From assembly GCA_963924565.1 (NCBI GenBank), contig OZ004612.1:26040001-26104000 (forward strand): a stretch of 64,000 nt of DNA, in the 5' to 3' direction. Positions 46,183-64,000 of the stretch are shown piece by piece. This DNA comes from Ascidiella aspersa (lineage: Eukaryota). Positions within the stretch are counted from its first letter, which is position 1; every line of letters begins with the position of its first letter. The translations under genes and the position numbers were made by a program. The notes below the pieces were generated by a model that ran no database searches, was not told the origin of the DNA, and worked only from the letters and a program-made list of their open reading frames with translations.

Positions 46183-46729
46183 ATGTAGACGACTGGAGAT
46201 CGAATTTCTGGTGAACCCTAAGAGACACGGGGGGCACGGGGGGCATCTTAACACAAGGACCTTACACACCCTGCTTTGTCCTGCCTAACTGCTGAATGCG
46301 CCAATCGCAACCAGATTTCCTGCATCTGGTTTTGGTTAGAAAAACTTTTCTTCCAAAAAGTTGGACGACGCTTGACCAAATAAAATATATATTTACGCAA
46401 ACATAAAGATTTGGGTAAAGCGTCTTATAATAGCTCGTTTATATCGTTAACGTTCGTGAAAAACTGCATAACCTGGTTAAGCAACATAAGTATTTATCTA
46501 ATCTAAGTTTGCATATTTTAAATCTAAGAGAATAACGTGCTCACGACGCTTTATTACACAAAACGAACTAAAAAGTTGTGACAAAGAGTTTCTTAAAACA
46601 CATGCTAGGAAGTAAACCCATATTCCGGCTCAGCAGATAAGTTTGGTGTTTCGTGAATGGCCTATAAAAGCCCTAAATAGTGTTGGATTGCAAAAAATAG
46701 TGTTTGAATTGCCTAAATAGTGTTGGATT

Positions 46730-49700
46730 TTCAAAATAATATCATTTGATTCTTTAAAACCAATTTTCAGTTATTTCCAACCAAACATTAAAAAACGATT
46801 TGTATTTTTTAATTGCATCAATAATAATAGTATAGCGCCAATATAATTGAGGTAAACACTTACCGGTATGTAAGGAGCATCGCTTTCCGCTTAAAGACAG
46901 GAAGCTTAGATTGAAAACGCATTCGGGAGTTGCTATCAGCCTCGCGTTAAGCATCTGCGTTCAGTACAAAAGCACACGCTGTTTACGTTTTATTCTCATC
47001 ACTAGCACACTCCGTAGAATTTATGTAAATGTAGATTGTGCACACGGCCATGTTATTAATGGTTACACTTTGTTCGTGCGTGTTAAATCATTTGGCGTGT
47101 CCTGAAATATCATCTCGCTTGTGGCACGCGCACGCTTGCCAGGGGTTGCCGACCACTGATGTAGATCGTGCATACGGCCATGTTATTGAATTCTGGACAG
47201 CTAACATGTTTAAAAATAAAATATAATCATTCTCTCATATGGGTTAACGCCTATGGTTTGCTATACTTTTGCCAGCTTTTTTTCAATTTTACCATGCCTT
47301 AGTCGGTGCAATCACTGTTAAATCAGACTTTTAATCTGTTGTTGCGAGCATTATGCAAAACTCTTTTACCTGTCTAGTACGCCAATTTTGAATTCGAAAG
47401 TTTTGCCAATTTGAACAAAATAAACGCAGTGTTTTTAAGATTTAATTTTTCATGGCGCCATGTCATGACGTAACTTTGTAACGTCATCCCTAATGATGCA
47501 TTCAACTTTAGTACTTTGCTCGCTGCGGTTCTTATACAGTTTTAAGTTTTGCAGGTCTGCTGTTGATATGTTTGGTTGGACCAATATGCGAAACAGGTGC
47601 CTCCAGATTTCGCACTTAAATTTGCGGCGGTGAAGTATTCGTTTTTGTAAGATTTTCCTAACAAAACCTCTTTCTAAAAGGCAAGTCGCATACACGTTTT
47701 AAGAAAAGGTTCTTAAAAATGTATCTAATCGGCATTTCTGATATTTTGGACCAATAAAGCAGGTATCGTATGTCTTCTTTGTTTTTAATTCCAGCCGACC
47801 CAGGTCATGGTAAACTCGAAAGCATTTTAGAGGCCCTCAAAAAAAACATTTGAGAACCCCTGGCTTAAGTGTAGCTCTCAAGTCATGGTGTAATCCCACA
47901 AAAAATGGTTTTGAGATTAATACGAGTAATATTAAACAAGCGAAGTGGAAATAAGTTTTTTCTTATTCAAAATAATATCATTTGATTTTTTTTAAACTAA
48001 TATTAAGTTATTTTCAACCAAACATTAAAACAACGATTTGTTTTTTTTAATTGCATCAATAATAATAGTATAGCGCCAATATAATTGAGGTAAACACTTC
48101 CCGGTATATAAGGAGCATCGCTTTCCGCTTAAAGACAGGAAGCTTAGATTGAAAACGCATTCGGGAGTTGCTATCAGCCTCGCGTTAAGCATCTGCGTTC
48201 AGTACAAAAGCACACGCTGTTTACCTTTTATTCTCATCACTAGCACACTCCGTAGAATATATGTAATTGTAGATCGTGCATACGGCCATGTTATTAATGG
48301 TAACACTTTGTTCGTGCGTGTTGAATCATTTGGCGTGCCCTAAAAAATCATCATCTCGCTTGTGGCACGCGCATGCTTGCCAGGGGTTGCCGACCACTGA
48401 TGTAGATCGTGCATACGGCCATGTTATTGAATTCTGGACAGCTAACATGTTTAAAAATCAAATATACTCATTCTCTCAAATGGGTTAACGCCTATGGTTT
48501 GCTATACTTTTGCCAGCTTTTTTTCAATTTTACCATGCCTTAGTCCAGTGGTCGGCAAACTTTTTTTGTCTCGGTCCTAAGTACTTTTTCGAGAGCCATT
48601 GAAGGCCCACTAAGCAAAACCTCTACGAAACAGTTGCGGATTTAGGATATTTAATTTGAAGGTCAAATATTACACAGCGCCTTGATGGCCGAAACACTAC
48701 CAGGCCATAATGTAAAACCTACAATAAAACGAAGGCCCACAACTACATGATAACACTAAACTATTCAAAAGTAACTCGCGGCCCACTAAAAATGACTCTG
48801 CGGCCCACATTTGGGCCGCGGCCCACAGTTTGCCGACCACTGCCTTAGTCGATACAATCACTGTTAAATCAGACTTTTAATCTGTTGTTGCGAGCATTAT
48901 GCAAAACTCTTTTACCTGCCTAGTACGACATCTTCAAAATCGAAATTTTGCCAATTTGAACAAAATAGACGCAGTGTTTTTAAGATTTAATTTTTCATGG
49001 CGCCATGTTTTGACGAAACTTTGTGACGTCATCCCTAATAATGCATTCAACTTTAGTACTTTGCTTGCTGCGGTTCTTGTGCTGTTTTAAGTTGTGCAGG
49101 TCTGCTGTTGATAAGTTTGGTTGGACCAATATGCGAAACAGGTGCCTCCAGATTTTGCACTTAAATTTGCGGCGGTAAAGTGTTCGTTTTTGTAAGATTT
49201 TCCTAACAAAACCTCTTTCTGAAAGGCAAGTCGCATACAAGTTTTAAGAAAAGGTTCTTAAAAAATGTATCTAATCGGCATTTCTGATATTTTGGACCAA
49301 TAAAGCAGGTATCGTATGCCTTCTTTGTTTTTAATTCCTGCCGACTCGGGTCATCGTAAACTCGAAAGCATTTTAGGGGCCCTCAAACAAAATGTTTAAG
49401 AAGCCCTTGCTTAAGTGTAGCGCTCTTTTTTTTTAGTTATTCCCAACCAAACATTAAAAAAAACGATTTTTTTTTAAGTGCATCAATAATAATAGCATAG
49501 CGCCAATATAATTGAGGTAAACACTTCCCGGTATATAAGGAGCATCGCTTTCCGCTTAAAGACAGGAAGCTTAGATTGAAAACGCATTCTGGAGTTGCTA
49601 TTAGCTTCGCGTTAAGCATCTGCGTTCAATACAAAAGCACACGCTGTTCACTTTTTATTCTCATCACTAGCACACTCCGTAGAATTTATGTAAATGTAGA

Positions 49701-50935
49701 TCGTGCATACGGCCACGTTATTAATGGTTACACTTTGTTCGTGCGTGTTAAATCATTTGGCGTGCCCTGAAAAATCATCTCGCTTGTGGCACGCGCACGC
49801 TTGCCAGGGGTTGCCGACCACTGATGTAGATCGTGCATACGGCCATGTTATTGAATTCTGGACAGCTAACATGTTTAAAAATAAAATATAATCATTCTCT
49901 CAAATGGGTTAACACCTATGGTTTGCTATACTTTTGCCAGCTTTTACTCGTAAATTTTTACCATGCCTTAGTCGGTGCAATCACTGTTAAACCGGACTTT
50001 TAATCTGTTGTTGCGAGCATTATGCAAAACTCTTTTACCTGTCTAGTACGCCAATTTTGAATTCGAAAGTTTTGCCAATTTGAACAAAATAAACGCAGTG
50101 TTTTTAAGATTTAATTTTTCATGGCGCCATGTCATGACGTAACTTTGTAACGTCATCCCTAATGATGCATTCAACATTAGTACTTTGCTTGCTGCGGTTC
50201 TTGTACTGTTTTAAGTTGTGCAGGTCTGCTGTTGATATGTTTGGTTGGACCAATATGCGAAACAGGTGCCTCCAGATTTCGCACTTAAATTTGCGGCGGT
50301 AAAGTATTCGTTTTTTGTAAGATTTTCCTAACAAAAACACCTTTCTGAAAGGCAAGTCGCATTCGCGGTTTAATTCTCCAAGTCGCATACGCGTTTTAAG
50401 AAAAGGTTCTTAAAAATTGTATCTAATCGGCATTTCTGATATTTTGGACCAATAAAGCAGGTATCGTATGCCTTCTTTGTTTTTAATTCCTTCCGACTCG
50501 GGTCATCGTAAACTCGAAAGCATTTTAGGGGCCATCAAACAAAATATTTAAGAACCCCTGGCTTAAGTGTAGCGCTCAAGTCATGGTGTTATCCCACAAA
50601 AAATGGTTTTGAGATTAATACGAGTAATATTAAACAAGCAGAGTGGAAATAAGTTTTTTCTTATTCAAATTAATATCGTTTGATTTTTTAAACCCAATAT
50701 TTATTTATTTTAACCAAACATTGAAAAAACGATTTGTTTTTTTTTTAAGTGCATCAATAATAACAGAATAACGCCGATATAATTGAGGTAAACACTTCCC
50801 GGTATATAAGGAGCATCGCTTTCCGCTTAAAGACAGGAAGCTTAGATTGGAAACGCATTCGGGAGTTGCTATCAGCCTCGCGTTATGTATCTGCGTTCAA
50901 TTAAAAATCACGCTGTTTACATTTTGCTCTCATCA
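46730..50935. repeat. Tandem array, ~1.25-kb unit x ~3.2
   Basis: Marker GAGGTAAACACTT at ~46849, 48087, 49514, 50785. Confidence 0.95.
48546..48842. mobile_element. Young hAT MITE in one satellite unit
   Basis: Perfect TIR CAGTGGTCGGCAAACT and perfect TSD ccttagtc; absent from sister units. Confidence 0.95.
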
Positions 50936-51396
50936 GTAAAATAATGGCTGTTTATCAACTCAGCTGTGATAGAACAAACAGTACACAATGGCATACAGTA
51001 AGGTAGTTCTCTTAATTCAACACAGGGCATGCCAGTTATTGAATAAAAATGGTTTTATTTTGTGAATTCTAATACTTTCACCTTATATCTTTCTATTGGC
51101 TTTTGTGTAAAGAATCACAAGCTTTTCAAATATTTTATGGTTATATTGTTACAATGCACACATCACATATATTGAATATAAAGGCTACAACTAATAAAAT
51201 TCAAACGACAACATTTACAGCAAGCTCACTGATAAACAGAAACATAAGGCTATGGTGATTATATATGACATAAATTAACATGAAGATTTTCTAGATTTAA
51301 AAGTATGTGAGGGGTAATGCAGTCAGCTTTTGTGTGTTTATATGTTCTTCCCAGTTCAAATGACCCACAATTGCTATATCTTTTGTATTTCTGAAC

Positions 51397-54300
51397 CTAC
51401 AGTTGACTTTCTGCTATGACATTCCCGTCTTTATTTCTGCTTATTGTAGGAAACTTAATTTTTTTAAGTTTCTTCAATCGAACAGTGCATCTGTCTATTA
51501 ATGTGGAGTAAAGCAAGGGGTTCAATGCACTGTTAATAGGAAGCAAAATACCAGCACTAATAAGATAAACATCATTGGGTAGTGGAACACCAGAAACAGC
51601 CAAGTAAGCAAGCACACACATTGGGATCCAGCAACAGAAGTCAGTAATAAGCAAGCGAGAAATACGTTTTTGCAATTCGCTGTTGGGTTGCTTGTTTCTA
51701 GATTTAGCCATTTTGTTACTTCGTATGTAAATCAGTATGTAAGCCACAAGCATGAAAATGAATAACAGAAAGTTGAGTGTGATAAGAAATACAGAATATT
51801 GCCAAGAAGCGTCATTTGTAGAGGCGAACAGTCTGGGCATGCAAACACTAGTTTCGCCATAATACCCAAATATTCCTTTTATCGGTTGATTCGGGAAGGT
51901 ATCGCTAATTGTTTGAGTGACGTCGTGCCAATGAAGTGACGTCAGGTTATGTGGTTTTATGTTATTGGCTAAATCAACCATCTTTTGTTTAGGGACTTGA
52001 TTAGTTTTGAAAAATCTACTTGAAAACCAAACATGAGAAACAAAATATCCTGAACTGTAATCAAACACAGGCAGTAGTGAAAATAGAAATGCAAATAGCC
52101 AAACACATGCACATGAAATGTAAATCCCTTTTAACCCCATAGTCCTAGTGATGAATGGTTTGTAAACTGTTACAAGCCTAAACGCTGTCATGACAGCCAT
52201 AGTACCCGAAGAGGCCATGGTAGCTAAAACACACAACATCCCAAGAATGCAACAAGAAATACTAGTACGCCAAATTGCGTCAAACGAGCAATAATCTCCC
52301 GAAAACTGCAACCCTTTTATGCTTATTGCAATAAGATAAATCCCCATGAGAAAATCAGCGGGTGCCAAACTAAGCAAAATTATGTAGGTGCTTTTTGTAT
52401 AGTTATCTGCGTTCTTGTTATTTACAATGTCCCTTATAGTAATAACGACCACCGTTAAGTTCCCGATGCCAGCTGCCAACCCCATTATCCAGAAGAAGGC
52501 TCTGTAAACAGGGTTGGCGATCATTTCCTTTTGATTTGAAAAAGTGGAACTTCGCTTACTTATGGGTGGGCACTCGTCACTTCCATCCGAACATTGAGGG
52601 ATTCCATCTTCAACCAAGTTGATGTCGACTGACAGGGGATTTCCATTCCGACAGTAAAACCTTGTTTCGCTGCATCGCGTTGCATTCTCGTCGGATCCAT
52701 CGTCGCAGTCTACTATTCCATCGCAAAAGTTGTTGACATCGATGCTTCTGAGCGCTCCACTGGCGCATTCGTGTCGCTTTGGGCATAATCCACGTTCGTC
52801 GCATGAAAGAGGAGACACATATACCCCCTTACATGCATCTCCAAACCTGGCTCTAATACCCATGCAATCCACATTGCAGAACTTGGGTCGAGGCTCACAA
52901 CCATTGCATTCATCTTCCATTTCGTAACATTCAGGTCTTCCATCGCATTTTGTGGCACGTGTGAAGGGTGAATAGTAGTTGGGTCTGCAAAATATGCGAT
53001 CTTCTTCACCCTTATCCTGAGCTAGTCCGCAATGTTTCATGTTAGATTCACCTGCACACTTTACTTCTGGGTTACAAAGCACTTTGTCCATATTCACGCA
53101 GTCTGTTGCATTGTGGCAATGCACTTGGTTTGGAGGGCAAGTGTCTCTTGCGTCGCCTAATATATTATGGCAAACTGTTTGGTCGTCACACAAACATTCA
53201 TCGGAAAGATCATAGCAGTCTGGAACCCCGTTGCAAACTTGCTGTTGGGAAACAACCAGTCGTTTGTCCAAGCACAAGAAGCAAACGAATTGTCCATCAA
53301 CGAAACATAGATCTGACCTGTCAGCACACTGAGGTTCATCGTCATAGATATTTATCTGGGGTAAAACGCAAATTCCAGTTCTGCCTGTTCCTGAGCATTT
53401 AAAACCCAGCCCGGTTTCGATTTCATCATCATTGCAACGAATATGTTGGTTGTCGCAATATTCATGGGTGGAAATGAGATTACCGTTACTGCATCGTGTC
53501 AAACTTGTGTGTGTTCCCTGCTCACACACCCACTGACCATTACAAACCCTGTCTCTCCTCCCTTCACACGGCCCCATAAGTTGTCGGCAAGTCGTGTTGT
53601 GGATCGCTTGATACTTGCTTTTGCTTGTCTCGTTGAAGCAATAAGTTACGCTAACCCACTTACCGCGAACAAATACCCTCCGATCATCGCAAGGCTCCAT
53701 TCGTCCGACGCACTGGATTCTACCGTCAGCCACTTGTTGCTGGCAAGCCCCGCAAAACCACTTGTCGCTAACGTCTAAGCAACGGGGCGGTCCACTGTCA
53801 CATATATGCTGCTCGCGAACACACTGAAGCCCATCGTTGCAATGTACCAAACCACTTCCACAGCTGCTGCAGTTCGTTTCATCACTCCAATCGTTACAAT
53901 TCTTCCGCCCATCGCACCACGAACATGCGCGAAAGCACCTCTTATTATCGCACTTCTTCGCTCCTGGTTTGCAAGTTGTGCAGTTTATCTCATCACTCCA
54001 GTCGTAACAAGTATGCCACCCATCGCACCACATACTCTCAGGAACACACTGCTTCCCATCATCGCACTTCTTTGCTCCTGATTTGCAAGTTGTACAGTTC
54101 GTCTCATCGCTGTGATCATTACAAACCTTTCTCCCATCGCACCACTTACTCTCAGAAACACACTGCTTCCCATCATCGCACTTCTTTGCTCCTGATTTGC
54201 AAGTTGTACAGTTCGTCTCATCGCTGTGATCATTACAACCCTTTCTCCCATCGCACCACATACTCTCCGAAACACACTGCTTCCCATCATCGCACTTCTT

Positions 54301-54948
54301 TGCTCCTGATTTGCAAGTTGTACAGTTCGTCTCATCGCTTAAATCAGCACAACCCTTTCTCCCATTGCACCACCAACTTGCGGGAACACACAGCTTCCCA
54401 TCATCGCACTTCTTCGCTCCTGGTTTGCAAGTTGTACAGTTCGTCTCATCGCTGAAATCAGCACAAGTCTGCCACCCATTGCACCACGTACTCTCAGGAA
54501 CACACAGCTTCCCATCATCGCACTTCTTCGCTCCTGGTTTGCAAGTTGTACAGTTCGTCTCATCGCTAAAATCAGCACAACCCTTTCTCCCATTGCACCA
54601 CCAACTTGCGGGAACACACTTGCTCCTATCATCGCACATCTTTGCTCCTCCATTGCAAGTTGTACAGTTTGTTTCATCACTCCTATCGTCACAATGCCAC
54701 CACCCGTCGCACCACTTACTTCCAGAAACACATTGTCTCCCATCATCGCACTTCTTCGCTCCTGGTTTGCAAGTTGTGCAGTTCGTCTCATCACTCTTAT
54801 CGTCACAAGTCTTCAACCCATCACAAACATCAGTTTGGTTGATGCATTTCCCATCTGGCCTGCTACATTCGAACTGATCTCTGGCGCATCTTGCTTTAGC
54901 TCCTATACACAAGGCAAGCAGAGCAGAAACAAAAATTTGCAACTGCAT
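51397..54948 (-). CDS. Intronless LDLa-repeat rhodopsin-class GPCR (GRL101/RXFP-like 7TM, no LRRs), copy A
   Basis: Signal peptide MQLQIFVSALLALCIGAKA; 10 N-terminal LDLa-type modules (8 in the TTC array) plus further LDLa/Cys-rich modules; GNL, LAPADFLMGIYL, TDFCCWIP, PINSALNPLLY; first ATG at 54948. Confidence 0.95.
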   Translation of the reverse strand: MQLQIFVSALLALCIGAKARCARDQFECSRPDGKCINQTDVCDGLKTCDDKSDETNCTTCKPGAKKCDDGRQCVSGSKWCDGWWHCDDRSDETNCTTCNGGAKMCDDRSKCVPASWWCNGRKGCADFSDETNCTTCKPGAKKCDDGKLCVPESTWCNGWQTCADFSDETNCTTCKPGAKKCDDGKLCVPASWWCNGRKGCADLSDETNCTTCKSGAKKCDDGKQCVSESMWCDGRKGCNDHSDETNCTTCKSGAKKCDDGKQCVSESKWCDGRKVCNDHSDETNCTTCKSGAKKCDDGKQCVPESMWCDGWHTCYDWSDEINCTTCKPGAKKCDNKRCFRACSWCDGRKNCNDWSDETNCSSCGSGLVHCNDGLQCVREQHICDSGPPRCLDVSDKWFCGACQQQVADGRIQCVGRMEPCDDRRVFVRGKWVSVTYCFNETSKSKYQAIHNTTCRQLMGPCEGRRDRVCNGQWVCEQGTHTSLTRCSNGNLISTHEYCDNQHIRCNDDEIETGLGFKCSGTGRTGICVLPQINIYDDEPQCADRSDLCFVDGQFVCFLCLDKRLVVSQQQVCNGVPDCYDLSDECLCDDQTVCHNILGDARDTCPPNQVHCHNATDCVNMDKVLCNPEVKCAGESNMKHCGLAQDKGEEDRIFCRPNYYSPFTRATKCDGRPECYEMEDECNGCEPRPKFCNVDCMGIRARFGDACKGVYVSPLSCDERGLCPKRHECASGALRSIDVNNFCDGIVDCDDGSDENATRCSETRFYCRNGNPLSVDINLVEDGIPQCSDGSDECPPISKRSSTFSNQKEMIANPVYRAFFWIMGLAAGIGNLTVVVITIRDIVNNKNADNYTKSTYIILLSLAPADFLMGIYLIAISIKGLQFSGDYCSFDAIWRTSISCCILGMLCVLATMASSGTMAVMTAFRLVTVYKPFITRTMGLKGIYISCACVWLFAFLFSLLPVFDYSSGYFVSHVWFSSRFFKTNQVPKQKMVDLANNIKPHNLTSLHWHDVTQTISDTFPNQPIKGIFGYYGETSVCMPRLFASTNDASWQYSVFLITLNFLLFIFMLVAYILIYIRSNKMAKSRNKQPNSELQKRISRLLITDFCCWIPMCVLAYLAVSGVPLPNDVYLISAGILLPINSALNPLLYSTLIDRCTVRLKKLKKIKFPTISRNKDGNVIAESQL

Positions 54949-56889
54949 GTTATCAGTTTCCAAAATCTCGTGTTAAACTTCTAGTGAAAATATAACGGTT
55001 TAATCGTTAACGAATTTCCACGACTAAAGGTCAACAATAATATGGCAAGAAAATCCATATATTTTGTGTCTCGTAATTCGTTGTAACAAACGTATTCAAT
55101 ACTGTGGGAAAATTTTTAAAAAAAGTAAATAAATGAAACATGTTTAGTCTAAACCTTGCACTACGCAAATAAGTGAGTAGCAGTCTCTTATCGTATTTGT
55201 TATTTGTAAACAAGTTGCTAAATTTAGTGATTGGTAAATCATAGAACTTAATTTTTAACAGAACATGAAATACCAGGACGTCGAAACGTCGATTGATTAT
55301 AAAAAAACTGCTGGATGAGCAACACTCGGTTATACATTATGCCTGGCTGCAATAGCTTATTTCATAAAATACAATGTTAACCTATAACACCTCAACTAAT
55401 CACATACATTGCTATGAAACAATTTAAACTTCACTGAAATGGTGCACTAATGAGAAAAAGGTAAACAAAACCATAGCTAACGTCATGTTCAAATCCACAG
55501 CTACAACAACATAACTCTGTATATATTTTTCCACATTTATCTCGTTTTGTGAATATTCACTCCTGACTGCAACTTTCAATATTTTAAATAACAAAATCCC
55601 CGCAAAGTGAAAACAAAGACTAAAATAATTAAAAAAAAGCAGAAAATTTAAGCACACACCTATTACTATACGAACTTTGTTGAAAAACTACAAATCTAAG
55701 ATAACTATTTATTTCAACAATTGCACGGTTAGCAACATTACATTAGAACACTGCTTAAATATATACAAAGCGTTTTTGAGAGCAAATATCTCATTTCTTG
55801 CTACTACTGTTTTACGTTAGTAAGATATCAACAATAAACACCAGTCGCCGCGTGAAAATCATGAAAAAAATGTTCTTCATTGTGACGTAACACGGATGTA
55901 CACCTGTTGTTCCTGTCGCGTTTTGGGTCGGGCACAAGCAAACGTCTTTCAATCACTTAAAGCAGTGGTTCTTAACCTTTGGTAACCTGTCCAACCCCTG
56001 TGTTATTCTGCAAGCGTTCGTCGAACCCCAAATTTTCGCTTAGTTTTTGTTTCTTCCTCCTAGCAGCTGAAACTGGGCATAATCAATTATCAACTTGCAC
56101 TTATATAGGTTAAATTGGCTCAACTTTCAATCTATAACGTTACATGCCGCACCTTGGCGCAAAAAAGAGCTTACAAAAAATAGCTTGAAATAACAGCAGT
56201 TATGTTCCAGAGAACGTTCTCGCCGAATCCTTGAAAAAAATCTTAAGTTAACAAAATTCTACCTACTTCTTTATTAATTATACGTCTAACTACAACCTCC
56301 AACCATTATCTTTTATCGATTTATTCGAAACGTTTGTCTAAACGACATAGATTGGCGCATTTTTAAAGATACTTGGTCGAGTGACAACTATACCCGTCTA
56401 TTACTCGGTTACTCATTGTTCATTTGGTTCAAGTTAAGTTATGCACTCGCCGACTGTAATATTTATAATGATTAAAGAGCACTTAATTTCATATTTAAAA
56501 AATTTTAGTTTTTTTGCGTGCATCAAATTTCTTTTTTTAATATTACCGATAAAAAATAAAAAAAACTGGAAAAAATATTTGCTAATTCCATTTCGCTGAA
56601 TAGATAATTTATCTCTTATATAAACACTATGAAATAAATATTATTTACCTATAATTTGCACAATAGTTGACTTTAATTTAAAAGGCGATACTAAACATAT
56701 TTTTTCCATTAACTTCTAGATAAGTATAAAAAAAAACGTGCTCACGACGCTTTATTAAACAAAACAGACTAAAAAGTTGTGACAAAGAGTTTCTTAAAAC
56801 ACATGCTAGGAAGTAAACCCATATTCCGGCTCAGCAGATCAGTTTGGTGTTTCGTGAATGGCCTATAAAAGCCCTAAATAGTGTTGGAT

Positions 56890-59670
56890 TTTCAAAATAA
56901 TATCATTTGATTCTTTAAAACCAATTTTTGTTTATTTTCAACCAAACATTAAAAAAACGATTTGTTTTTTTAATTGCATCAATAATAATAGTATAGCGCC
57001 AATATAATTGAGGTAAACACTTCCCGGTATATAAGGAGCATCGCTTTCAGTTGAAAGATAGGAAGCTTAGATTGAAAAAGAATTCAGGAGTTGCTATTAG
57101 CCTCGCGTTAAGCATCTGCGTTCAGTACAAAAGCACACGCTGTTTACGTTTTATTCTCATCACTAGCACACTTCGTAGAATTTATGTAATTGTAGATTGT
57201 GCATACGGCCACGTTATTAATGGTTACACTTTGTTCGTGCGTGTTAAATCATTTGGCGTGCCCTAAAAAAATCATCATCTCGCTTGTGGCACGCGCACGC
57301 TTGCCAGGTGTTGCCGACCACTGATGTAGGTCGTGCATACGACCATGTTATTAAATTCTGGACAGCTAACATGTTTAAAAATGAAATATAATCATTCTCT
57401 CAAATGGGTTAACACCTATGGTTTGCTCTACTTTTGCCAGCTTTTACTCGTAAATTTTTACCATACCTTAGTCGGTGCAATCACTGTTAAATCGGACTTT
57501 TAATTTGTTGTTGCGAGCATTATGCTAAACTCTTTTACCTGTCTAGTACGCCAATTTTGAATTCGAAAGTTTTGCCAATTTGAACAAACTAAACGCAGTG
57601 TTTTTAAGATTTATTTTTTTATGACGTCATGTCATGACGTAACTTTGTAACGTCATCCCTAATAATGCATTCAACTTTAGTGCTTTGCTTGCTGTGTTTC
57701 TTGTGCAATTTTAAGTTGTGCAGGTTTGCTTTTGATATGTTTGGTTGGACCAATATGCGAAACAGGTGCCTCCAGATTTCGCATTGAAATTTGCGGCGGT
57801 AAAGTATTCGTTTTTTGTAAGATTTTCCTAACAAAAACCTCTTTCTGAAAGGCAAGTCGCATACACGTTTTAAGAAAAGGTTCTTAAAAAATGTATCTAA
57901 TCGGCATTTCTGATATTTTGGACCAATAAAGCAGGTATCGTTTGCCTCTTTGTTTTTAATTCCTGCCGACTCGGGTCATCGTAAACTCGAAAGCATTTTA
58001 GGGGCCCTCAAACAAAATGTTTAAGAAGCCTTTGCTTAAGTGTAGCGCTCAAGTCATGGTGTAATCCCACAAAAAATGGTTTTGAGATTGATACGAGTTA
58101 AACAAGCTAAGTGGAAATAAGTTTTTTCTTATTCAAAATAATATCATTTGATTTTTTTAAACTAATATTTAGTTATTTTCAACCAAACATTAAAAAAACG
58201 ATTTGTATTTTTTAATTGCATCAATAATAATGGTATAGCGCCAATATAATTGAGGTAAACACTTCCCGGTATATAAGGAGCATCGCTTTCCGCTTAAAGA
58301 CAGGAAGCTTAGATTGGAAAAGCATTCGGGAGTTGCTATTAGCCTCGCGTTAAGCATCTGCGTTCAACACAAAAGCACACGCTGTTTACCTTTTATTCTC
58401 ATCACTAGCACACTCCGTAGAATTTATGTAATTGTAGATCGTGCATACGGCCATGTTATTAATGGTTACACTTTGTTCGTGCGTGTTAAATCATTTGGCG
58501 TGTCCTGAAAAATCATCTCGCTTGTGGCACGCGCACGCTTGCCAGGGGTTGCCGACCACTGATGTAGGTCGTGCATACGGCCATGTTATTGAATTCTGGA
58601 CAGCTAACATGTTTAAAAATAAAATATAATCATTCTCTCAAATGGGTTAACACCTATGGTTTGCTATACTTTTGCCAGCTTTTTTTCAATTTTACCATGC
58701 CTTAGTCGGTGCAATCACTGTTAAATCAGACTTTTAATCTGTTGTTGCGAGCATTATGCAAAACTCTTTTACCTGTCTAGTACGCCATTTTTCAAATCGA
58801 AAGTTTTGCCAATTTGAACAAAATAAACGCTGTGTTCTCAAGATTTATTTTTTATGACGCCATGTCATGACGTAACTTTGTAACGTCATCCCTAAAAATG
58901 CATTCAACTTTAGTACTTTGCTTGCTGCTGTCCTTGTACAGTTTTAAGTTGTGCAGGTCTGCTGTTGATATGTTTGGTTGGACCAATATGCGAAACAGGT
59001 GCCTTCAGATTTCGCATTTCAATTTGCGCCGGTAAAGTATTTGTTTTTTGTAAGTTTTTACTAACAGAAACCTCTTTCTGAAAGGCAAGTCGCATTCGCG
59101 GTTTAATTCTCCAAGTCGCATACACGTTTTTGAGAAAAGGTTCTTAAAAAATGTAACTAATCGGCATTTCTGATATTTTGGACCAATAAAGCAGGTATCG
59201 TGTATGTCTTCTTTGTTTTTAATTCCAGCCGACTCAGGTCATTGTAAAATCGAAAGCATTTTAGGGGCCATCAAACAAAATATTTAAGAACCCCTGGCTT
59301 AAGTGTAGCGCTCAAGTCATGGTGTTATCCCACAAAAAATGGTTTTGAGATTAATACGAGTAATATTAAACAAGCAGAGTGGAAATAAGTTTTTTCTTAT
59401 TCAAATTAATATCATTTGATTTTTTAAACCCAATTTTTATTTATTTTCAACCAAACATTGAAAAAACGATTTGTTTTTTTTTAAGTGCATCAATAATAAT
59501 GGTATAGCGCCAATATAATTGAGGTAAACACTTCCCGGTATATAACGAGCATCGCTTTCCGCTTAAAGACAAGAGGCTTAGATTGAAAACGCATTCGGGA
59601 GTTGCTATCAGCCTCGCGTTATGTATCTGCGTTCAATAAAAAAGCACACTGTTTACATTTTGCTCTCATC
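56890..59670. repeat. Tandem array, ~1.25-kb unit x ~2.2
   Basis: Marker GAGGTAAACACTT at ~57011, 58252, 59521. Confidence 0.95.
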
Positions 59671-60134
59671 ACTACAATAATGGCTGTTTATCAACTCAGC
59701 TGTGATAGAACAAACAGTACACAATGGCATACAGTAAGGTAGTTCTCTTAATTCAACACAGGGCATGCCAGTTATTGAATAAAAATGGTTTTATTTTGTG
59801 AATTCTAATACTTTCACCTTATATCTTTCTATTGGCTTTTGTGTAAAGAATCACAAGCTTTTCAAATATTTTATGGTTATATTGTTACAATGCACACATC
59901 ACACATATCGAATATAAAGGCTACACAATAAATACAATTCAAACGACAACATTTACAGCAAGCTTACTGATAAACAGAAACATAAGGCGATGGTGATTAT
60001 ATATGCCATAAATTAACATGAAGATTTTCTAGTTTTTAAAAAATGTGAGGAGTAATTCAGTCAGCTTTTGTGTGTTTATATGTTCTTCCTAGTTCAAATG
60101 AACCACAATTACTATATCTTTTGTATTTCTGAAC

Positions 60135-63100
60135 CTACAGTTGACTTTCTGCTATGACATTCCCTTCTTTATTTCTGCTTATTGTAGGAAACTTATTTTT
60201 TTTAAGTTTCTTCAATCGAACAGTGCATCTGTCTATCAATGTGGAGTAAAGCAAGGGATTCAATGCACTGTTAATAGGAAGAAAAATACCAGCACTAATA
60301 AGATAAACATCATTTGGGAGTGGAATACCAGAAACAGCCAAGTAAGCAAGCACGCACATTGGGATCCAGCAACAGAAGTCAGTAATAAGCAAGCGAGAAA
60401 TACGTTTTTGCATTTCGCTATTGGGTTGCTCGTTTTTAGATTTAGCCATTTTGTTACTTTGTATGTAAATCAGTATGTAAGCCACAAGCATGAAAATGAA
60501 TAGCAGAAAGTTGAATGTGATAAGAAATACAGAATATTGCCAAGAAGCGTCATTTGTAGAGGCGAACAGTCTGGGCATGCAAACACTAGTTTCGCCATAA
60601 TACCCAAATATTCCTTTTATCGGTTGATTCGGGAAGGTTTTGCTAATTGTTTGAGTGACGTCGTGCCAATAAGGTGACGTCAGGTTATGTGGGTTTATGT
60701 TATTGGCTAAATCAACCATCTTTTGTTTAGGGACTTGATTAGTTTTGAAAAATCTACTTGAAAACCAAACATGAGAAACAAAATATCCTGAACTGTAATC
60801 AAACACAGGCAGTAGTGAAAATAGAAATGCAAATAGCCAAACACATGCACATGAAATGTAAATCCCTTTTAACTCCATAGTCCTAGTGATGAATGGTTTG
60901 TAAACTGTTACAAGTCTAAACGCTGTCATGACAGCCATAGTCCCCGAAGAGGCCATGGTAGCTAAAACACACAACATCCCGAGCATGCAACAAGAAATAC
61001 TAGTACGCCAAATTGCGTCAAACGAGCAATAATCTCCCGAAAACTGCAACCCTTTTATGCTTATTGCAATAAGATAAATCCCCATGAGAAAATCAGCGGG
61101 TGCCAAACTAAGCAAAAATATGTAGGTGCTTTTTGTGAAGTTTTCTGCGTTTTTTTTATTCACAATATCCCTTATAGTAATAACGACCACCGCTAAATTC
61201 CCGATGCCAGCTGCCAACCCCATTATCCAGAAGAAGGCTCTGTAAACAGGGTTGGCGATCATTTCCTTTTGATTTGAAAAAGTGGAACTTCGCTTACTTA
61301 TGGGTGGGCACTCGTCACTTCCATCCGAACATTGCGGGAAACCATCTTCAACTAAGTTGATGTCGACCGACAGTGGCTTTCCATTACGACAGTAAAACCT
61401 TGTTTCGCTGCATCGCGTCTCATGCTCGTCCGATCCATCATCGCAGTCTACTATTCCATCGCAAAAGTTGTTGACATCGATGCTGCTGAGCGCTCCACTG
61501 GCGCATTCGTGTCGCTTTGGGCATAATCCACGTTCGTCGCATGAATAAGTAGACACATATACCCCCTTACATGCATCTCCAAACCTGGCTCTAATACCCA
61601 TGCAATCCACATTGCAGAACTTGGGTCGAGGCTCACAACCATTGCATTCATCTTCCATGTCGTAACATTCAGGTCTTCCATCGCATTTTGTGGCACGTGT
61701 GAAGGGTGAATAGTAGTTGGGTCTGCAAAATATGCGATCTTCTTCACCCTTATCCTGAGCTAGTCCGCAATGTTTCATGTTAGATTCGCCTGCACACTTT
61801 ACTTCTGGGTTACAAAGCGCTTTGTCCATATTCACGCAGTCTGATGCATTGTGGCAATGCATTTGGTTTGGAGGGCAAGTGTCTCTTGCGTCGCCTAATA
61901 TATTATGGCAAACTGTTTGGTCGTCGCACAAACATTCATCGGAAAGATCATAGCAGTCTGGAACCCCGTTGCAAACTTGCTGTTGGGAAACAACCAGTCG
62001 TTTGTCCAAACACAAGAAGCAAACGAATTGTCCATCAACGAAACATAGATCTGACCTGTCAGCACACTGAGGTTCATCGTCATAGATATTTATCTGGGGT
62101 AAAACGCAAATTCCAGTTCTGACTGTTCCTGAGCATTTAAAACCCAGCCCGGTTTCGATTTCATCATCATTGCAACGAATATGTTGGTTGTCGCAATATT
62201 CATGAGTCGAAATGAGATTACCGTTACTGCATCGTGTCAAACTTGTGTGTGTTCCCTGCTCACACACCCACTGTCCATTACAAACCCTGTCTCTCCTCCC
62301 TTCACACGGCCCCATAAGTTGTCGGCAAGTCGTGTTGTGGATCGCTTGATACTTGCTTTTGCTTGTCTCGTTGAAGCAATAAGTTACGCTAACCCACTTA
62401 CCGCGAACAAATACCCTCCGATCATCGCAAGGCTCCATTCGTCCGACGCACTGGATTCTACCGTCAGCCACTTGTTGCTGGCAAGCCCCGCAAAACCACT
62501 TGTCGCTAACGTCTAAGCAACGGGGCGGCCCACTGTCACATAAATGCTGCTCGCGAACACACTGAAGCCCATCGTTGCAATGTACCAAACCACTTCCACA
62601 GCTGCTGCAGTTCGTTTCATCACTCCAATCGTTACAATTCTGCAACCCATCGCACAACGAACATGCGCGAAGGCACCTCCTCTCATTATCGCACTTCTTC
62701 ACTCCTGGTTTGCAAGTTGTGCAGTTTATCTCATCACTCCAGTCGTAACAATTATTCCACCCATTGCACCACAAACTCTCAGAAACACACTGCTTCCCAT
62801 CATCGCACTTCTTTTCTCCTGATTTGCAAGTTGTTGTGCAGTTAGTCTCATCGCTCCAATCGTTACAACCCTTCCACCCATCGCACCACCAACTTGTAAG
62901 AATACACTGCTTTCCATCATCGCACTTCTTCGCTCCTGGTTTGCAAGTTGTACAGTTCGTCTCATCGCTGAAATCAATACAACCCCTTCTCCCATTGCAC
63001 CATATGCTTGCGTGAACACATTGCCTCCCATCATCGCACTTCTGTGCTCCTGGTTTGCAAGTTGTACAGTTCGTCTCATCGCTTAAATCATCACAGGTCT

Positions 63101-63464
63101 GCCACCCATTGCACCTCAAACTTGCGGGAACACACTTGCTCCTATCATCGCACATCTTTGCTCCTGGTTTACAAGTTGTGCAGTTTGCCTCATCACTCTT
63201 ATCGGAACAATTCCACCACCCGTCACACCACGTACTTTCAATAACACACTGCTTCCCATTATCACACTTCTTCGCTCCTGGTTTGCAAGTTGTACAGTTT
63301 GTCTCATCACTCTTATCGTCACAATTCTTCAACCCATCACAAACATCAGTTTGGTTGATACATTTCCCATCTGGCCTGCTACATTCGAACTGATCTCTGG
63401 CGCATCTTGCTTTAGCTCCTATACACAAGGCAAGCAGAGCAGAAACAAAAATTTGCAACTGCAT
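60135..63464 (-). CDS. Intronless LDLa-repeat GPCR, copy B
   Basis: Same architecture as copy A with 6 TTC-array repeats; 74 aa shorter = 2x38 minus two 1-aa insertions. Confidence 0.95.
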   Translation of the reverse strand: MQLQIFVSALLALCIGAKARCARDQFECSRPDGKCINQTDVCDGLKNCDDKSDETNCTTCKPGAKKCDNGKQCVIESTWCDGWWNCSDKSDEANCTTCKPGAKMCDDRSKCVPASLRCNGWQTCDDLSDETNCTTCKPGAQKCDDGRQCVHASIWCNGRRGCIDFSDETNCTTCKPGAKKCDDGKQCILTSWWCDGWKGCNDWSDETNCTTTCKSGEKKCDDGKQCVSESLWCNGWNNCYDWSDEINCTTCKPGVKKCDNERRCLRACSLCDGLQNCNDWSDETNCSSCGSGLVHCNDGLQCVREQHLCDSGPPRCLDVSDKWFCGACQQQVADGRIQCVGRMEPCDDRRVFVRGKWVSVTYCFNETSKSKYQAIHNTTCRQLMGPCEGRRDRVCNGQWVCEQGTHTSLTRCSNGNLISTHEYCDNQHIRCNDDEIETGLGFKCSGTVRTGICVLPQINIYDDEPQCADRSDLCFVDGQFVCFLCLDKRLVVSQQQVCNGVPDCYDLSDECLCDDQTVCHNILGDARDTCPPNQMHCHNASDCVNMDKALCNPEVKCAGESNMKHCGLAQDKGEEDRIFCRPNYYSPFTRATKCDGRPECYDMEDECNGCEPRPKFCNVDCMGIRARFGDACKGVYVSTYSCDERGLCPKRHECASGALSSIDVNNFCDGIVDCDDGSDEHETRCSETRFYCRNGKPLSVDINLVEDGFPQCSDGSDECPPISKRSSTFSNQKEMIANPVYRAFFWIMGLAAGIGNLAVVVITIRDIVNKKNAENFTKSTYIFLLSLAPADFLMGIYLIAISIKGLQFSGDYCSFDAIWRTSISCCMLGMLCVLATMASSGTMAVMTAFRLVTVYKPFITRTMELKGIYISCACVWLFAFLFSLLPVFDYSSGYFVSHVWFSSRFFKTNQVPKQKMVDLANNINPHNLTSPYWHDVTQTISKTFPNQPIKGIFGYYGETSVCMPRLFASTNDASWQYSVFLITFNFLLFIFMLVAYILIYIQSNKMAKSKNEQPNSEMQKRISRLLITDFCCWIPMCVLAYLAVSGIPLPNDVYLISAGIFLPINSALNPLLYSTLIDRCTVRLKKLKKNKFPTISRNKEGNVIAESQL

Positions 63465-64000
63465 GTTATCAGTTTCCAAAATCTCGTGTTAAACTTCTAG
63501 TGAAAATATAACGGTTTAATCGTTAACGAATTTCCACGACTAAAGGTCAACAACAATATGGCAAGAAAACCCATATATTTTGTGTCTCGTATTTTGTTTG
63601 TACCAAACGTATTCAATAATGTTGGAAATTTGTTTTAAAATGTATATAAATGAAACATGTTTAGTCTAAACCTTGCACTCCGCAAATAATGGAGTAGCAG
63701 TCTCTTATCGTATTTGTTATTTGTAAACAAGTTGCTAAATTTAGTGATTGGTAAATCATAGAACTTAATTTTTAACAGAACATGAAATACAAGGACGTCG
63801 AAACGTCGATTGATTATAAAAAACTGCTGGATAAGCAACACTCGAATATACATTATGCCTGGCAGCAATAGCTTATTTCATAAAATACAATGTTAACCTA
63901 TAACACCTCAGCTAATCACATACATTGCTATGAAACAATTTAAACTTCACTGAAATGCTGCGCTAATGAGAAAAAGGTAAACAAAACCATAGCTAACGTC

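What the first reader, a model, noticed from the sequence alone, without database searches (positions are those of the whole stretch)
53869..63293. GPCR pair with a hypervariable LDLa repeat array: candidate diversifying recognition-receptor system
Seen: arrays at 53869-54777 (8 units) and 62607-63293 (6 units) share a fixed scaffold TTCKxGAKKCDDGxxC....WCxG...CxDxSDETNC, yet all 14 units differ, almost entirely in three patches: after Cys3 (VSGSK, VPASW, VPEST, VSESM, VIEST, VHASI, ILTSW), after G (WWH, RKG, WQT, RKV, WHT, WWN, RRG, WKG, WNN, LQN) and around D (DDR, ADF, NDH, YDW, SDK, IDF). These patches are rich in Trp, Arg, Lys and His. Outside the array the paralogs differ at only about 35 of ~820 residues by hand count, versus about a quarter of positions in matched repeats. 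Established: this part of an LDLa module is the Ca2+/ligand-contact surface; LDLa GPCRs lacking LRRs are known as an ascidian expansion and are orphans. Inference: the array is a modular binding surface under diversifying selection (conceptually like VLR LRR modules or TALE variable residues) coupled to a constant 7TM, suggesting immune, allorecognition or chemosensory use. I am not aware of this being described but cannot search.
Basis: partly seen in the sequence, partly recalled or inferred. Interest (0 to 1): 0.85.

Follow-up and report, generated by a model that had tools for sequence, protein, structure and literature searches.

The report
Fast-evolving LDLa arrays on ascidian GPCRs
Two neighbouring intronless sea-squirt genes belong to a known orphan receptor family (LDL-repeat GPCRs); their repeated outer modules are reshuffled, and across the family they change amino acids fastest where such modules normally grip a ligand, so the family is a testable candidate recognition repertoire, but no function or expression is shown.

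Summary
Two tandem intronless minus-strand genes (51397-54948 and 60135-63464) encode signal peptide, a classical LDLa module, 8 or 6 lineage-specific 38-aa LDLa units, a Cys-rich region and an RXFP1-like 7TM.

The architecture is not new. It is the LDLRR-GPCR family described in Ciona in 2008. This genome holds at least about 100 copies, and the scan's first readers noted the family in other windows.

- **Unit turnover.** Much of the difference between the two arrays comes from gain, loss and recombination of units. Unit A4 is a clean chimera of A3 and A2. Synonymous divergence is also high (A1/B1 dS 0.40, against 0.06 outside the array).
- **Window alone.** Positive selection cannot be shown from these two genes.
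- **Family level.** Site models pick positions 3, 16, 17, 19, 24, 25, 28, 30 and 34. A counting method gives only 1.0-1.2.
- **Location.** These sites sit within and around the canonical Trp and DxDxD ligand and Ca2+ positions, which are basic or aromatic here.

One RNA run gave no expression evidence. Function is inferred. The genes are new members of a known family; the selection result appears to be new.

The parts
51397..54948 (-). Gene A: intronless coding sequence from the first ATG (codon 6 of the listed frame) to the stop; 1183 aa LDLa-array GPCR
60135..63464 (-). Gene B: intronless tandem paralog, 1109 aa from the first ATG
54772..54948 (-). Gene A signal peptide (54892-54948) and classical first LDLa module, 'unit 0' (54772-54891); almost identical in B (1 non-synonymous and 3 synonymous differences in 64 codons)
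53863..54771 (-). Gene A array: eight 38-aa LDLa units (the last has 37 aa), aa 65-367
54316..54429 (-). Unit A4, a chimera. Its nt 1-38 are identical to A3 (A2 differs at 10). Its nt 39-114 match A2 with 1 difference (A3 differs at 11).
53746..53862 (-). Conserved terminal LDLa module after the array; a similar terminal module closes the arrays of most related genes examined
52519..53745 (-). Gene A Cys-rich middle ectodomain with further LDLa-like modules up to the membrane; omega 0.22 against B
51400..52518 (-). Gene A 7TM and tail. Best solved relative is relaxin receptor 1. CWIP and NPLLY motifs are kept; the E/DRY position reads FRL. Omega 0.38 against B.
62601..63287 (-). Gene B array: six 38-aa LDLa units (one linker is a residue longer), aa 65-293
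60138..61256 (-). Gene B 7TM and tail, 95% identical to A in protein
49432..55484 (.). Copy 1 of the segmental tandem duplication; copy 2 is 58168-64000 and runs off the window. Non-coding flanks are 4.1-4.8% diverged, the non-array coding sequence 2.7%, and the array 12.8% plus 234 gap columns.

Best explanation
These are two young tandem duplicates of the ascidian LDLRR-GPCR family. The protein has a signal peptide, a stalk of LDLa modules and an RXFP1-type 7TM, and no leucine-rich repeats.

**Shown**
- Both genes are intact and under purifying selection outside the array.
- The array is built of 114-nt units that lie in one exon. It changes by unequal crossing-over or gene conversion with breakpoints inside units. 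This changes unit number and makes chimeric units that recombine the first variable patch with the second and third.
- Across the family in this genome, about eight positions per unit (3, 16, 17, 19, 24, 25, 28, 30) accept amino-acid changes faster than synonymous changes, while the Cys, D29, S31, D32 and E33 scaffold is frozen.
- Those positions include the canonical Trp position and the centre of the C4-C5 pentapeptide that docks ligand lysines in LDLR and LRP modules. Here they are basic or aromatic, not acidic.
- The last Ca2+-binding Asp of the pentapeptide is absent from all 14 units of the window.

**Inferred**
- The array is the ligand-recognition part.
- Its specificity is diversified module by module, and by shuffling.
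- Binding is passed to a conserved 7TM, perhaps through the constant membrane-proximal LDLa modules, as in RXFP1.
- The likely use is a large recognition repertoire. Haemocyte or immune use is suggested by Ciona ESTs; chemosensory use is the alternative.
For: - **Family and architecture.**. At least 106 scored 7TM matches out of 332 candidates in the genome, nearly all open.
- **Purifying selection outside the array.** dS 0.063, dN 0.018, omega 0.29.
- **Unit turnover and chimeras.**
- **The array diverges faster than neutral flanks.** 12.8% against 4.1-4.8%.
- **Site models on 128 units.** M1a/M2a 2dlnL 179, M7/M8 133, M8a/M8 97, with omega 2.2-2.6. My code reproduces the IQ-TREE likelihood.
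- **Null simulations.** With two-tree recombination and a re-inferred tree, the test statistic was at most 27, against 219 for the real data in the same pipeline.
- **Tree-free likelihood on 51 independent unit pairs from other genes, sites fixed beforehand from the window.** Omega at patch sites 1.26-1.95, p from 0.08 to 1e-7.
- **Per-site tree-free estimates** agree with the site-model list.
- **No local hypermutation.** Synonymous rate is not raised at patch sites (pS 0.174 against 0.197).
- **Mapping to the ligand and Ca2+ site.**
- **Ciona ESTs** of the family come mostly from blood and haemocytes (PMC2396169).
Against: - **Counting method.** Nei-Gojobori counts on the same independent pairs give a patch pN/pS of only 1.00-1.23, not significant. 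Likelihood estimates can be inflated by multi-nucleotide changes or short conversion tracts.
- **Window alone.** Counts give omega 0.94 for six pairs. The two clearly matching unit pairs (12.5 non-synonymous against 0.5 synonymous differences) are not significantly above neutral.
- **Tree-based tests.** Recombination is demonstrably present, so these are compromised. Only 6 null replicates were run, and two of them failed to converge.
- **My M2a and M8 fits** use fixed relative branch lengths and were not fully converged.
- **Expression.** The RNA run laid 9 reads, none at 99% or better.
- **No ligand, no structure and no population sample.**
Confidence: 0.62

Rival explanations
1. Neutral turnover. 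The patches are simply unconstrained surface loops of a small disulphide-rich domain. Unequal crossing-over and gene conversion in a tandem repeat produce the differences, and there is no adaptive diversification.
For: - Window-only counts give omega 0.94 at patch sites.
- Counting on family pairs gives 1.00-1.23, not significant.
- Synonymous divergence in the array is high.
- Chimeric units exist.
- The non-synonymous rate of A7/B5 plus A8/B6 (0.066) is not different from flank divergence (0.047).
Against: - Tree-free likelihood with sites chosen beforehand gives omega 1.3-1.9, with a bootstrap CI that excludes 1.
- Site-model test statistics of 97-219 far exceed the 27 or less seen in recombination null simulations.
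- The same eight sites emerge from two methods.
Confidence: 0.25
2. Chemosensory repertoire rather than immune. The family is the ascidian counterpart of vertebrate odorant or vomeronasal receptor families and is used in siphon, larval or gamete chemoreception.
For: - Intronless genes, tandem clusters, 100 or more mostly intact copies with a few broken ones, and fast change at the presumed ligand site.
- Ciona has no olfactory-type receptors (table in PMC2396169).
Against: - Ciona ESTs of the family are mostly from blood and haemocytes.
- There are no expression data for this species.
- A large protein-binding ectodomain is unlike receptors for small odorants.
Confidence: 0.2
3. Allorecognition locus. 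The arrays are highly polymorphic between individuals and mark self.
For: In a DNA run of the same species (X12), depth at 97% likeness or better falls from about 12-16 in the non-array coding sequence, and about 6 in the flanks, to 0-5 across 53826-54903.
Against: - The drop can equally come from a different unit number in that individual, or from the difficulty of laying reads on a repeat.
- There are over 100 loci, which is unlike known single-locus ascidian systems.
- There are no segregation or population data.
Confidence: 0.08
4. Artefact or dead genes. The array is an assembly error, or the genes are decaying pseudogenes.
For: Low read depth over the array in one DNA run.
Against: - Both frames are open for more than 1100 codons, and all units are in phase.
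- Omega is 0.29 outside the array.
- Contigs of two other runs lie on parts of the array.
- The same architecture recurs in dozens of open loci.
Confidence: 0.03

Closest known systems
LDLRR-GPCR cluster of Ciona intestinalis (Kamesh, Aradhyam and Manoj 2008, PMC2396169)
   Same: - A rhodopsin delta-group 7TM most like the INSL3 and relaxin receptors.
- One to ten N-terminal LDL-A modules and no LRR.
- A lineage-specific expansion; the receptors are orphans.
- Named best hits are Ciona, Phallusia, Clavelina and Styela proteins.
   Different: - Only about 42% identical to Ciona members.
- At least about 100 copies here, against 14 confirmed (up to 28) in Ciona.
- A lineage-specific 38-aa unit with Cys spacing 6-5-6-5-8, a fixed Trp just before Cys4 and an N-x-T sequon. 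This unit was not found in the Ciona proteins fetched.
- Selection and unit shuffling were not analysed in that paper.
Relaxin family receptors RXFP1 and RXFP2, and snail GRL101
   Same: - The 7TM's best solved relative is RXFP1 (7tmw, E 8e-24), with conserved CWxP and NPxxY.
- LDLa module(s) sit at the N-terminus. In RXFP1 and RXFP2 the LDLa module is required for signalling, as cited in PMC2396169.
   Different: - No leucine-rich repeats, which are the hormone-binding part of RXFP and GRL101.
- Many LDLa modules instead of one.
- The E/DRY position reads FRL.
Ligand-binding complement-type repeats of LDLR, LRP1 and LRP2
   Same: - Six Cys and the D-x-S-D-E calcium motif. Pfam PF00057 and LRP2 alignments.
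- The fast sites coincide with the Trp position and the C4-C5 pentapeptide that contact ligand.
   Different: - Canonical DxDxD is replaced by [D/N]-G-[W/R/L]-x-[G/T/N/H/V]. None of the 13 standard-length window units has an acidic residue at the centre or at the last position, and the 37-aa unit A8 reads DGRKN.
- The conserved Trp is shifted by one residue.
- So the lysine-docking mode is unlikely, and calcium binding may be weakened.
Repeat-based variable receptors (lamprey VLR, TALE repeats) and multigene chemoreceptor families
   Same: - A constant repeat scaffold with a few variable surface positions per repeat.
- Birth-and-death expansion in tandem clusters.
- Omega above 1 at presumed contact sites.
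   Different: - No sign of somatic assembly (VLR) or of a residue-to-ligand code (TALE).
- The diversity seen here is germline, between paralogous units and genes.

Membership tests
LDLRR-GPCR (ascidian LDL-A repeat GPCRs without LRR) | Rhodopsin-type 7TM most similar to INSL3/relaxin receptors | tested here: met
   Pfam 7tm_1. Best PDB hit is RXFP1, E 7.6e-24, followed by LHCGR, TSHR, FSHR and LGR4.
LDLRR-GPCR (ascidian LDL-A repeat GPCRs without LRR) | One or more N-terminal LDL-A modules in tandem | tested here: met
   11 and 9 Ldl_recept_a stretches; units segmented.
LDLRR-GPCR (ascidian LDL-A repeat GPCRs without LRR) | No leucine-rich repeats | tested here: met
   No LRR family at E 0.01 or better in Pfam for either protein.
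LDLRR-GPCR (ascidian LDL-A repeat GPCRs without LRR) | Tunicate lineage-specific expansion | tested here: met
   All named hits among the best 120 are tunicates. At least 106 copies in this genome.
Canonical calcium- and lysine-binding LDLa (complement-type) module | Six cysteines and the D-x-S-D-E calcium ligands between Cys5 and Cys6 | tested here: met
   Cys, D29, S31, D32 and E33 are invariant in the 13 standard-length window units and nearly so in the other 115.
Canonical calcium- and lysine-binding LDLa (complement-type) module | DxDxD or DxxxD pentapeptide between Cys4 and Cys5, whose first and last Asp bind calcium | tested here: not met
   The last position is G, T, N, H or V in 13 of 13 standard-length window units; the 37-aa unit A8 reads DGRKN. 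The first position is D in 7 and N in 6, and the centre is never acidic. In other genes the last position is acidic in 50 of 115. Rule taken from PMC3304490.
Canonical calcium- and lysine-binding LDLa (complement-type) module | Trp two residues before Cys4 | tested here: not met
   Trp is at that position in 3 of 13 window units. A fixed Trp sits one residue before Cys4 in 11 of 13.
RXFP/LGR type C receptors | LRR ectodomain between LDLa and 7TM | tested here: not met
   No LRR found.
   Met at family level by likelihood. Not significant by counting. Not demonstrable for the window's two genes alone.
   Read depth collapses over the array in DNA run X12 at 97% likeness or better, but this has other explanations.
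   One RNA run of unknown tissue laid 9 reads, none at 99% or better. Ciona relatives have ESTs mostly from haemocytes.
   Model coordinates are not returned. By alignment, the sites flank the calcium site that forms the binding face of solved modules.

The most novel reading that the evidence does not exclude
A family of 100-300 intronless GPCRs whose LDLa stalk is a germline, modular recognition surface. It would be diversified by shuffling of 114-nt units inside an exon and by positive selection on about eight contact residues per module, with the usual acidic lysine-docking pocket turned into a basic or aromatic one. It would serve ascidians as a haemocyte (innate immune or self/non-self) or chemosensory repertoire, and would be highly polymorphic between individuals.
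Probability: 0.3. Interest if true: 0.78.

Novelty: new member of a known kind. Interest (0 to 1): 0.55.

Why it matters
Ascidians lack vertebrate-type odorant receptors and adaptive immunity, and their large orphan LDLRR-GPCR family has had no proposed logic since 2008.

If the array is a selected, shuffled binding surface on a constant signalling module, the family becomes a concrete candidate for the missing recognition repertoire. The work here names the residues to mutate and the modules to swap.

It would also be an example of LDLa modules re-tooled from acidic, lysine-docking pockets to basic or aromatic ones.

Tried and rejected
- **More family DNA.** All unit analyses therefore rest on the 30 loci, not on the whole family.
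- **Computation.** Running all six site-model fits in one call overran the 300 s limit, background jobs do not persist, and a subprocess Python lacked numpy. The fits were rerun in process.
- **Optimiser.** M2a and M8 fits did not fully converge: the class proportion is below the mean posterior. Their likelihood gains are therefore lower bounds. Two null replicates gave negative test statistics for the same reason.
- **Expression.** The only RNA run offered gave 9 reads, all 95-99% alike, probably from paralogs.
- **Polymorphism.** A pN/pS estimate could not be made because few reads lie on the array.
- **Cross-species check.** No Ciona family protein fetched has the 6-5-6-5-8 Cys spacing, so the variable positions could not be compared across species.
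- **Literature.** Searches for later work on the family found only the 2008 paper.
- **Not attempted.** Structure prediction was skipped, because the tool returns no coordinates with which to test the one-surface question.
- **Rejected readings.** Local hypermutation of the patches (synonymous rate is not raised there). Pseudogenes or an assembly artefact (open frames, omega 0.29).
Full report
**What is there**

The minus strand carries two long open frames, 51397-54963 and 60135-63479. Both begin with the same leader, and the first ATG is at codon 6, followed by a hydrophobic signal peptide.

Pfam finds many Ldl_recept_a stretches (11 and 9) and a 7tm_1 domain, and nothing else of note. In particular it finds no leucine-rich repeats.

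After the signal peptide comes one classical LDLa module ('unit 0'). It is followed by eight (gene A) or six (gene B) units of 38 aa with a fixed Cys spacing of 6-5-6-5-8. After these come a conserved terminal LDLa module, a Cys-rich region with further LDLa-like modules, and the 7TM. Tandem Repeats Finder sees the 114-nt period in both arrays.

All 14 units differ.

**The two genes are young duplicates, constrained outside the array**

The duplicated segment runs at least from 49432-55484 to 58168-64000.

| Region | Divergence between A and B |
|---|---|
| Non-coding flanks | 4.1-4.8% |
| Coding sequence after the array | 2.7% |
| Array | 12.8% of aligned columns, plus 234 gap columns |

Outside the array dS is 0.063 and dN is 0.018, so omega is 0.29. 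It is 0.22 in the rest of the ectodomain and 0.38 in the 7TM.

**The family is known**

- The 7TM's best solved relative is relaxin receptor 1 (E 8e-24). Its CWxP and NPxxY motifs are conserved, and the E/DRY position reads FRL.
- All named hits among the best 120 database matches are tunicate proteins, at about 42% identity or less.
- Kamesh et al. 2008 (PMC2396169) described this architecture in Ciona as the LDLRR-GPCR cluster. It has an INSL3/relaxin-receptor-like 7TM, one to ten LDL-A repeats and no LRR, and it is lineage-specific and orphan. Its ESTs come mostly from blood and haemocytes. I found no later paper on it.
- In this genome the 7TM of gene A has at least 106 scored matches out of 332 candidates. 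Nearly all lie in open frames of 850-1400 aa, and many are in tandem clusters.
- About 30 of these have a 7TM 85-95% identical to A. Their frames range from 913 to 1347 aa, and their arrays are only 46-78% identical. So the pattern of a constant 7TM with a variable array holds at family level.
- First readers of this scan noted the same family in several other windows of this genome.

**Why the two arrays differ**

The unit-by-unit matrix shows that only A7/B5 (dS 0.00, dN 0.07) and A8/B6 (dS 0.03, dN 0.07) have dS no higher than the rest of the gene.

- A1/B1 has dS 0.40.
- B4's nearest relative is a unit of a gene on another contig.
- A2 to A6, B2 and B3 form a group of recent copies.
- Unit A4 is a clean chimera. 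Its first 38 nt are identical to A3 (A2 differs at 10), and its last 76 nt differ from A2 at 1 site (A3 differs at 11). B2 has an A2-like first half and an A3-like second half.

So the array evolves by unequal crossing-over or conversion with breakpoints inside units. This changes unit number and re-pairs the first patch with the later ones. It agrees with the other first-reader note on this window (s1-794450).

It also means that much of the 'quarter of positions differ' is not point substitution between true counterparts.

In the two clearly matching unit pairs there are 12.5 non-synonymous and 0.5 synonymous differences. That ratio is higher than in the rest of the gene (Fisher p 0.001), but it is not significantly above the neutral expectation or the flank divergence.

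**Selection, tested on independent data**

I pulled 182 units with the same Cys spacing from the 30 loci fetched. I kept 128 non-identical units at least 55% identical to the consensus. Of these, 115 come from genes other than A and B.

*Site models.*
- A one-ratio codon model gives omega 0.49.
- My own codon likelihood code reproduces the IQ-TREE likelihood exactly.
- With topology and relative branch lengths fixed, the likelihood-ratio statistics are 179 for M1a/M2a, 133 for M7/M8 and 97 for M8a/M8. The selected class has omega 2.2-2.6.
- The sites assigned to that class are 3, 16, 17, 19, 24, 25, 28, 30 and 34.

*Recombination control.* Recombination invalidates such tests, so I simulated the null. 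Omega was capped at 1, the two halves of the unit evolved on different trees inferred from the real halves, and the tree was re-inferred from each simulated set. Six replicates gave statistics from -26 to 27. The real data in the same pipeline gave 219.

*Tree-free test.* I took 51 independent nearest-neighbour pairs of units from the other genes, gave each pair one divergence time, and fixed the site classes beforehand from the window.

| Test on the 51 pairs | Omega at patch sites | Significance |
|---|---|---|
| 7 sites chosen on window entropy | 1.5-1.95 | p 2e-3 to 1e-7 |
| All other sites | 0.12-0.46 | - |
| Bootstrap CI, 7 sites | 1.45-2.41 | - |

The ranges in the first three rows span three codon-frequency models and a run restricted to codons 14-36.

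Per-site tree-free estimates, using 58 pairs from all 128 units, exceed 1 at p below 0.05 for sites 3, 16, 17, 19, 24, 25, 28 and 30.

Synonymous change is not raised at patch sites (pS 0.174 against 0.197), which excludes local hypermutation.

*Against.* Simple Nei-Gojobori counting on the same pairs gives only 1.00-1.23, not significant. Likelihood estimates can be inflated by multi-nucleotide changes or short conversion tracts. I rate positive selection at these sites as likely (about two in three) at family level, and as not demonstrable from the window alone.

**Where the fast sites lie**

HMMER aligns the units to LRP2 modules so that unit position 19 is the canonical Trp and positions 22-26 are the pentapeptide between Cys4 and Cys5.

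In complement-type repeats (PMC3304490):
- The first and last Asp of the DxDxD pentapeptide bind calcium.
- The central residue gives its carbonyl to calcium and its side chain to the ligand lysine.
- The Trp carbonyl binds calcium, and its ring packs on the lysine.

In the window's units:
- The pentapeptide reads [D/N]-G-[W/R/L]-x-[G/T/N/H/V]. None of the 13 standard-length units has an acidic residue at the centre or at the last position.
- Trp occupies the canonical position in 3 of 13. An invariant Trp sits one residue later.
- Patch sites are 36% W, R, K or H and 8% D or E.

The chemistry is inverted relative to LDLR-type modules, and one calcium ligand is missing. In the other genes that Asp is present in 50 of 115 units.

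**Reads**

- One RNA run of the species laid 9 reads, none at 99% or better. This is no evidence of expression, and because the tissue is unknown it is no evidence of silence.
- In a DNA run of the same species, depth at 97% likeness or better is about 12-16 over the non-array coding sequence (A plus B cross-mapping) and about 6 in the flanks. It falls to 0-5 over 53826-54903.
- That drop fits higher allelic divergence or a different unit arrangement in that animal. It also fits mapping difficulty in a repeat.

**How it most likely works**

Shown:
- It is an intact receptor of the LDLRR-GPCR family.
- It has an exon-internal array that is reshuffled.
- In the family, amino acids are replaced fastest at about eight positions within and around the canonical binding site.

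Inferred:
- The array binds ligands.
- Its specificity is diversified by substitution and by module shuffling.
- The conserved proximal modules and 7TM transduce the signal.
- Use as a haemocyte or chemosensory repertoire is a hypothesis. It rests on the Ciona ESTs and on the family's evolutionary behaviour.

**Verdict**

These are new members of a known family. The architecture is not novel. The selection and shuffling pattern on LDLa modules appears to be undescribed and is moderately supported.

Noticed in passing
window 53863-54771 and 62601-63287: Each unit ends in an N-C-T sequon (N35-x-T37). It is kept in 13 of 13 window units and 93 of 115 others, so the stalk probably carries one N-glycan per module at the linker.
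   Followed up: partly
L002 (G000:C2:38571617-38572756, plus strand): A paralog with seven almost identical units that differ at only one or two positions (16-19). This looks like a very recent amplification or homogenisation, so not every array in the family is diverse.
   Followed up: no
window 46712-50935 and 56873-59674: A repeat of about 1.2 kb, present in several copies downstream of both genes at 90-95% identity. It carries small related open frames at 50119-50388, 57619-57855 and 58910-59125. Its nature is unknown.
   Followed up: no
window 51319-51403: In DNA runs X12, X1 and X2, 83 nt just 3' of gene A's stop are replaced by the same 33 letters: an indel polymorphism at the gene's end.
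   Followed up: no
window 51516-51823: Depth in DNA run X12 is 23-68, against about 12-16 for neighbouring coding sequence. This 7TM stretch is therefore at least 97% identical in several paralogs.
   Followed up: no
window about 52170-52180 (gene A, end of TM3): The position of the E/DRY motif reads F-R-L, aligned to E-K-Y of the RXFP1 chain. CWIP and NPLLY are canonical.
   Followed up: partly
proteins P0001-P0120: The 38-aa unit with Cys spacing 6-5-6-5-8 and a fixed Trp before Cys4 was absent from the 16 named Ciona family proteins and rare in the others. The module type seems specific to this lineage.
   Followed up: partly
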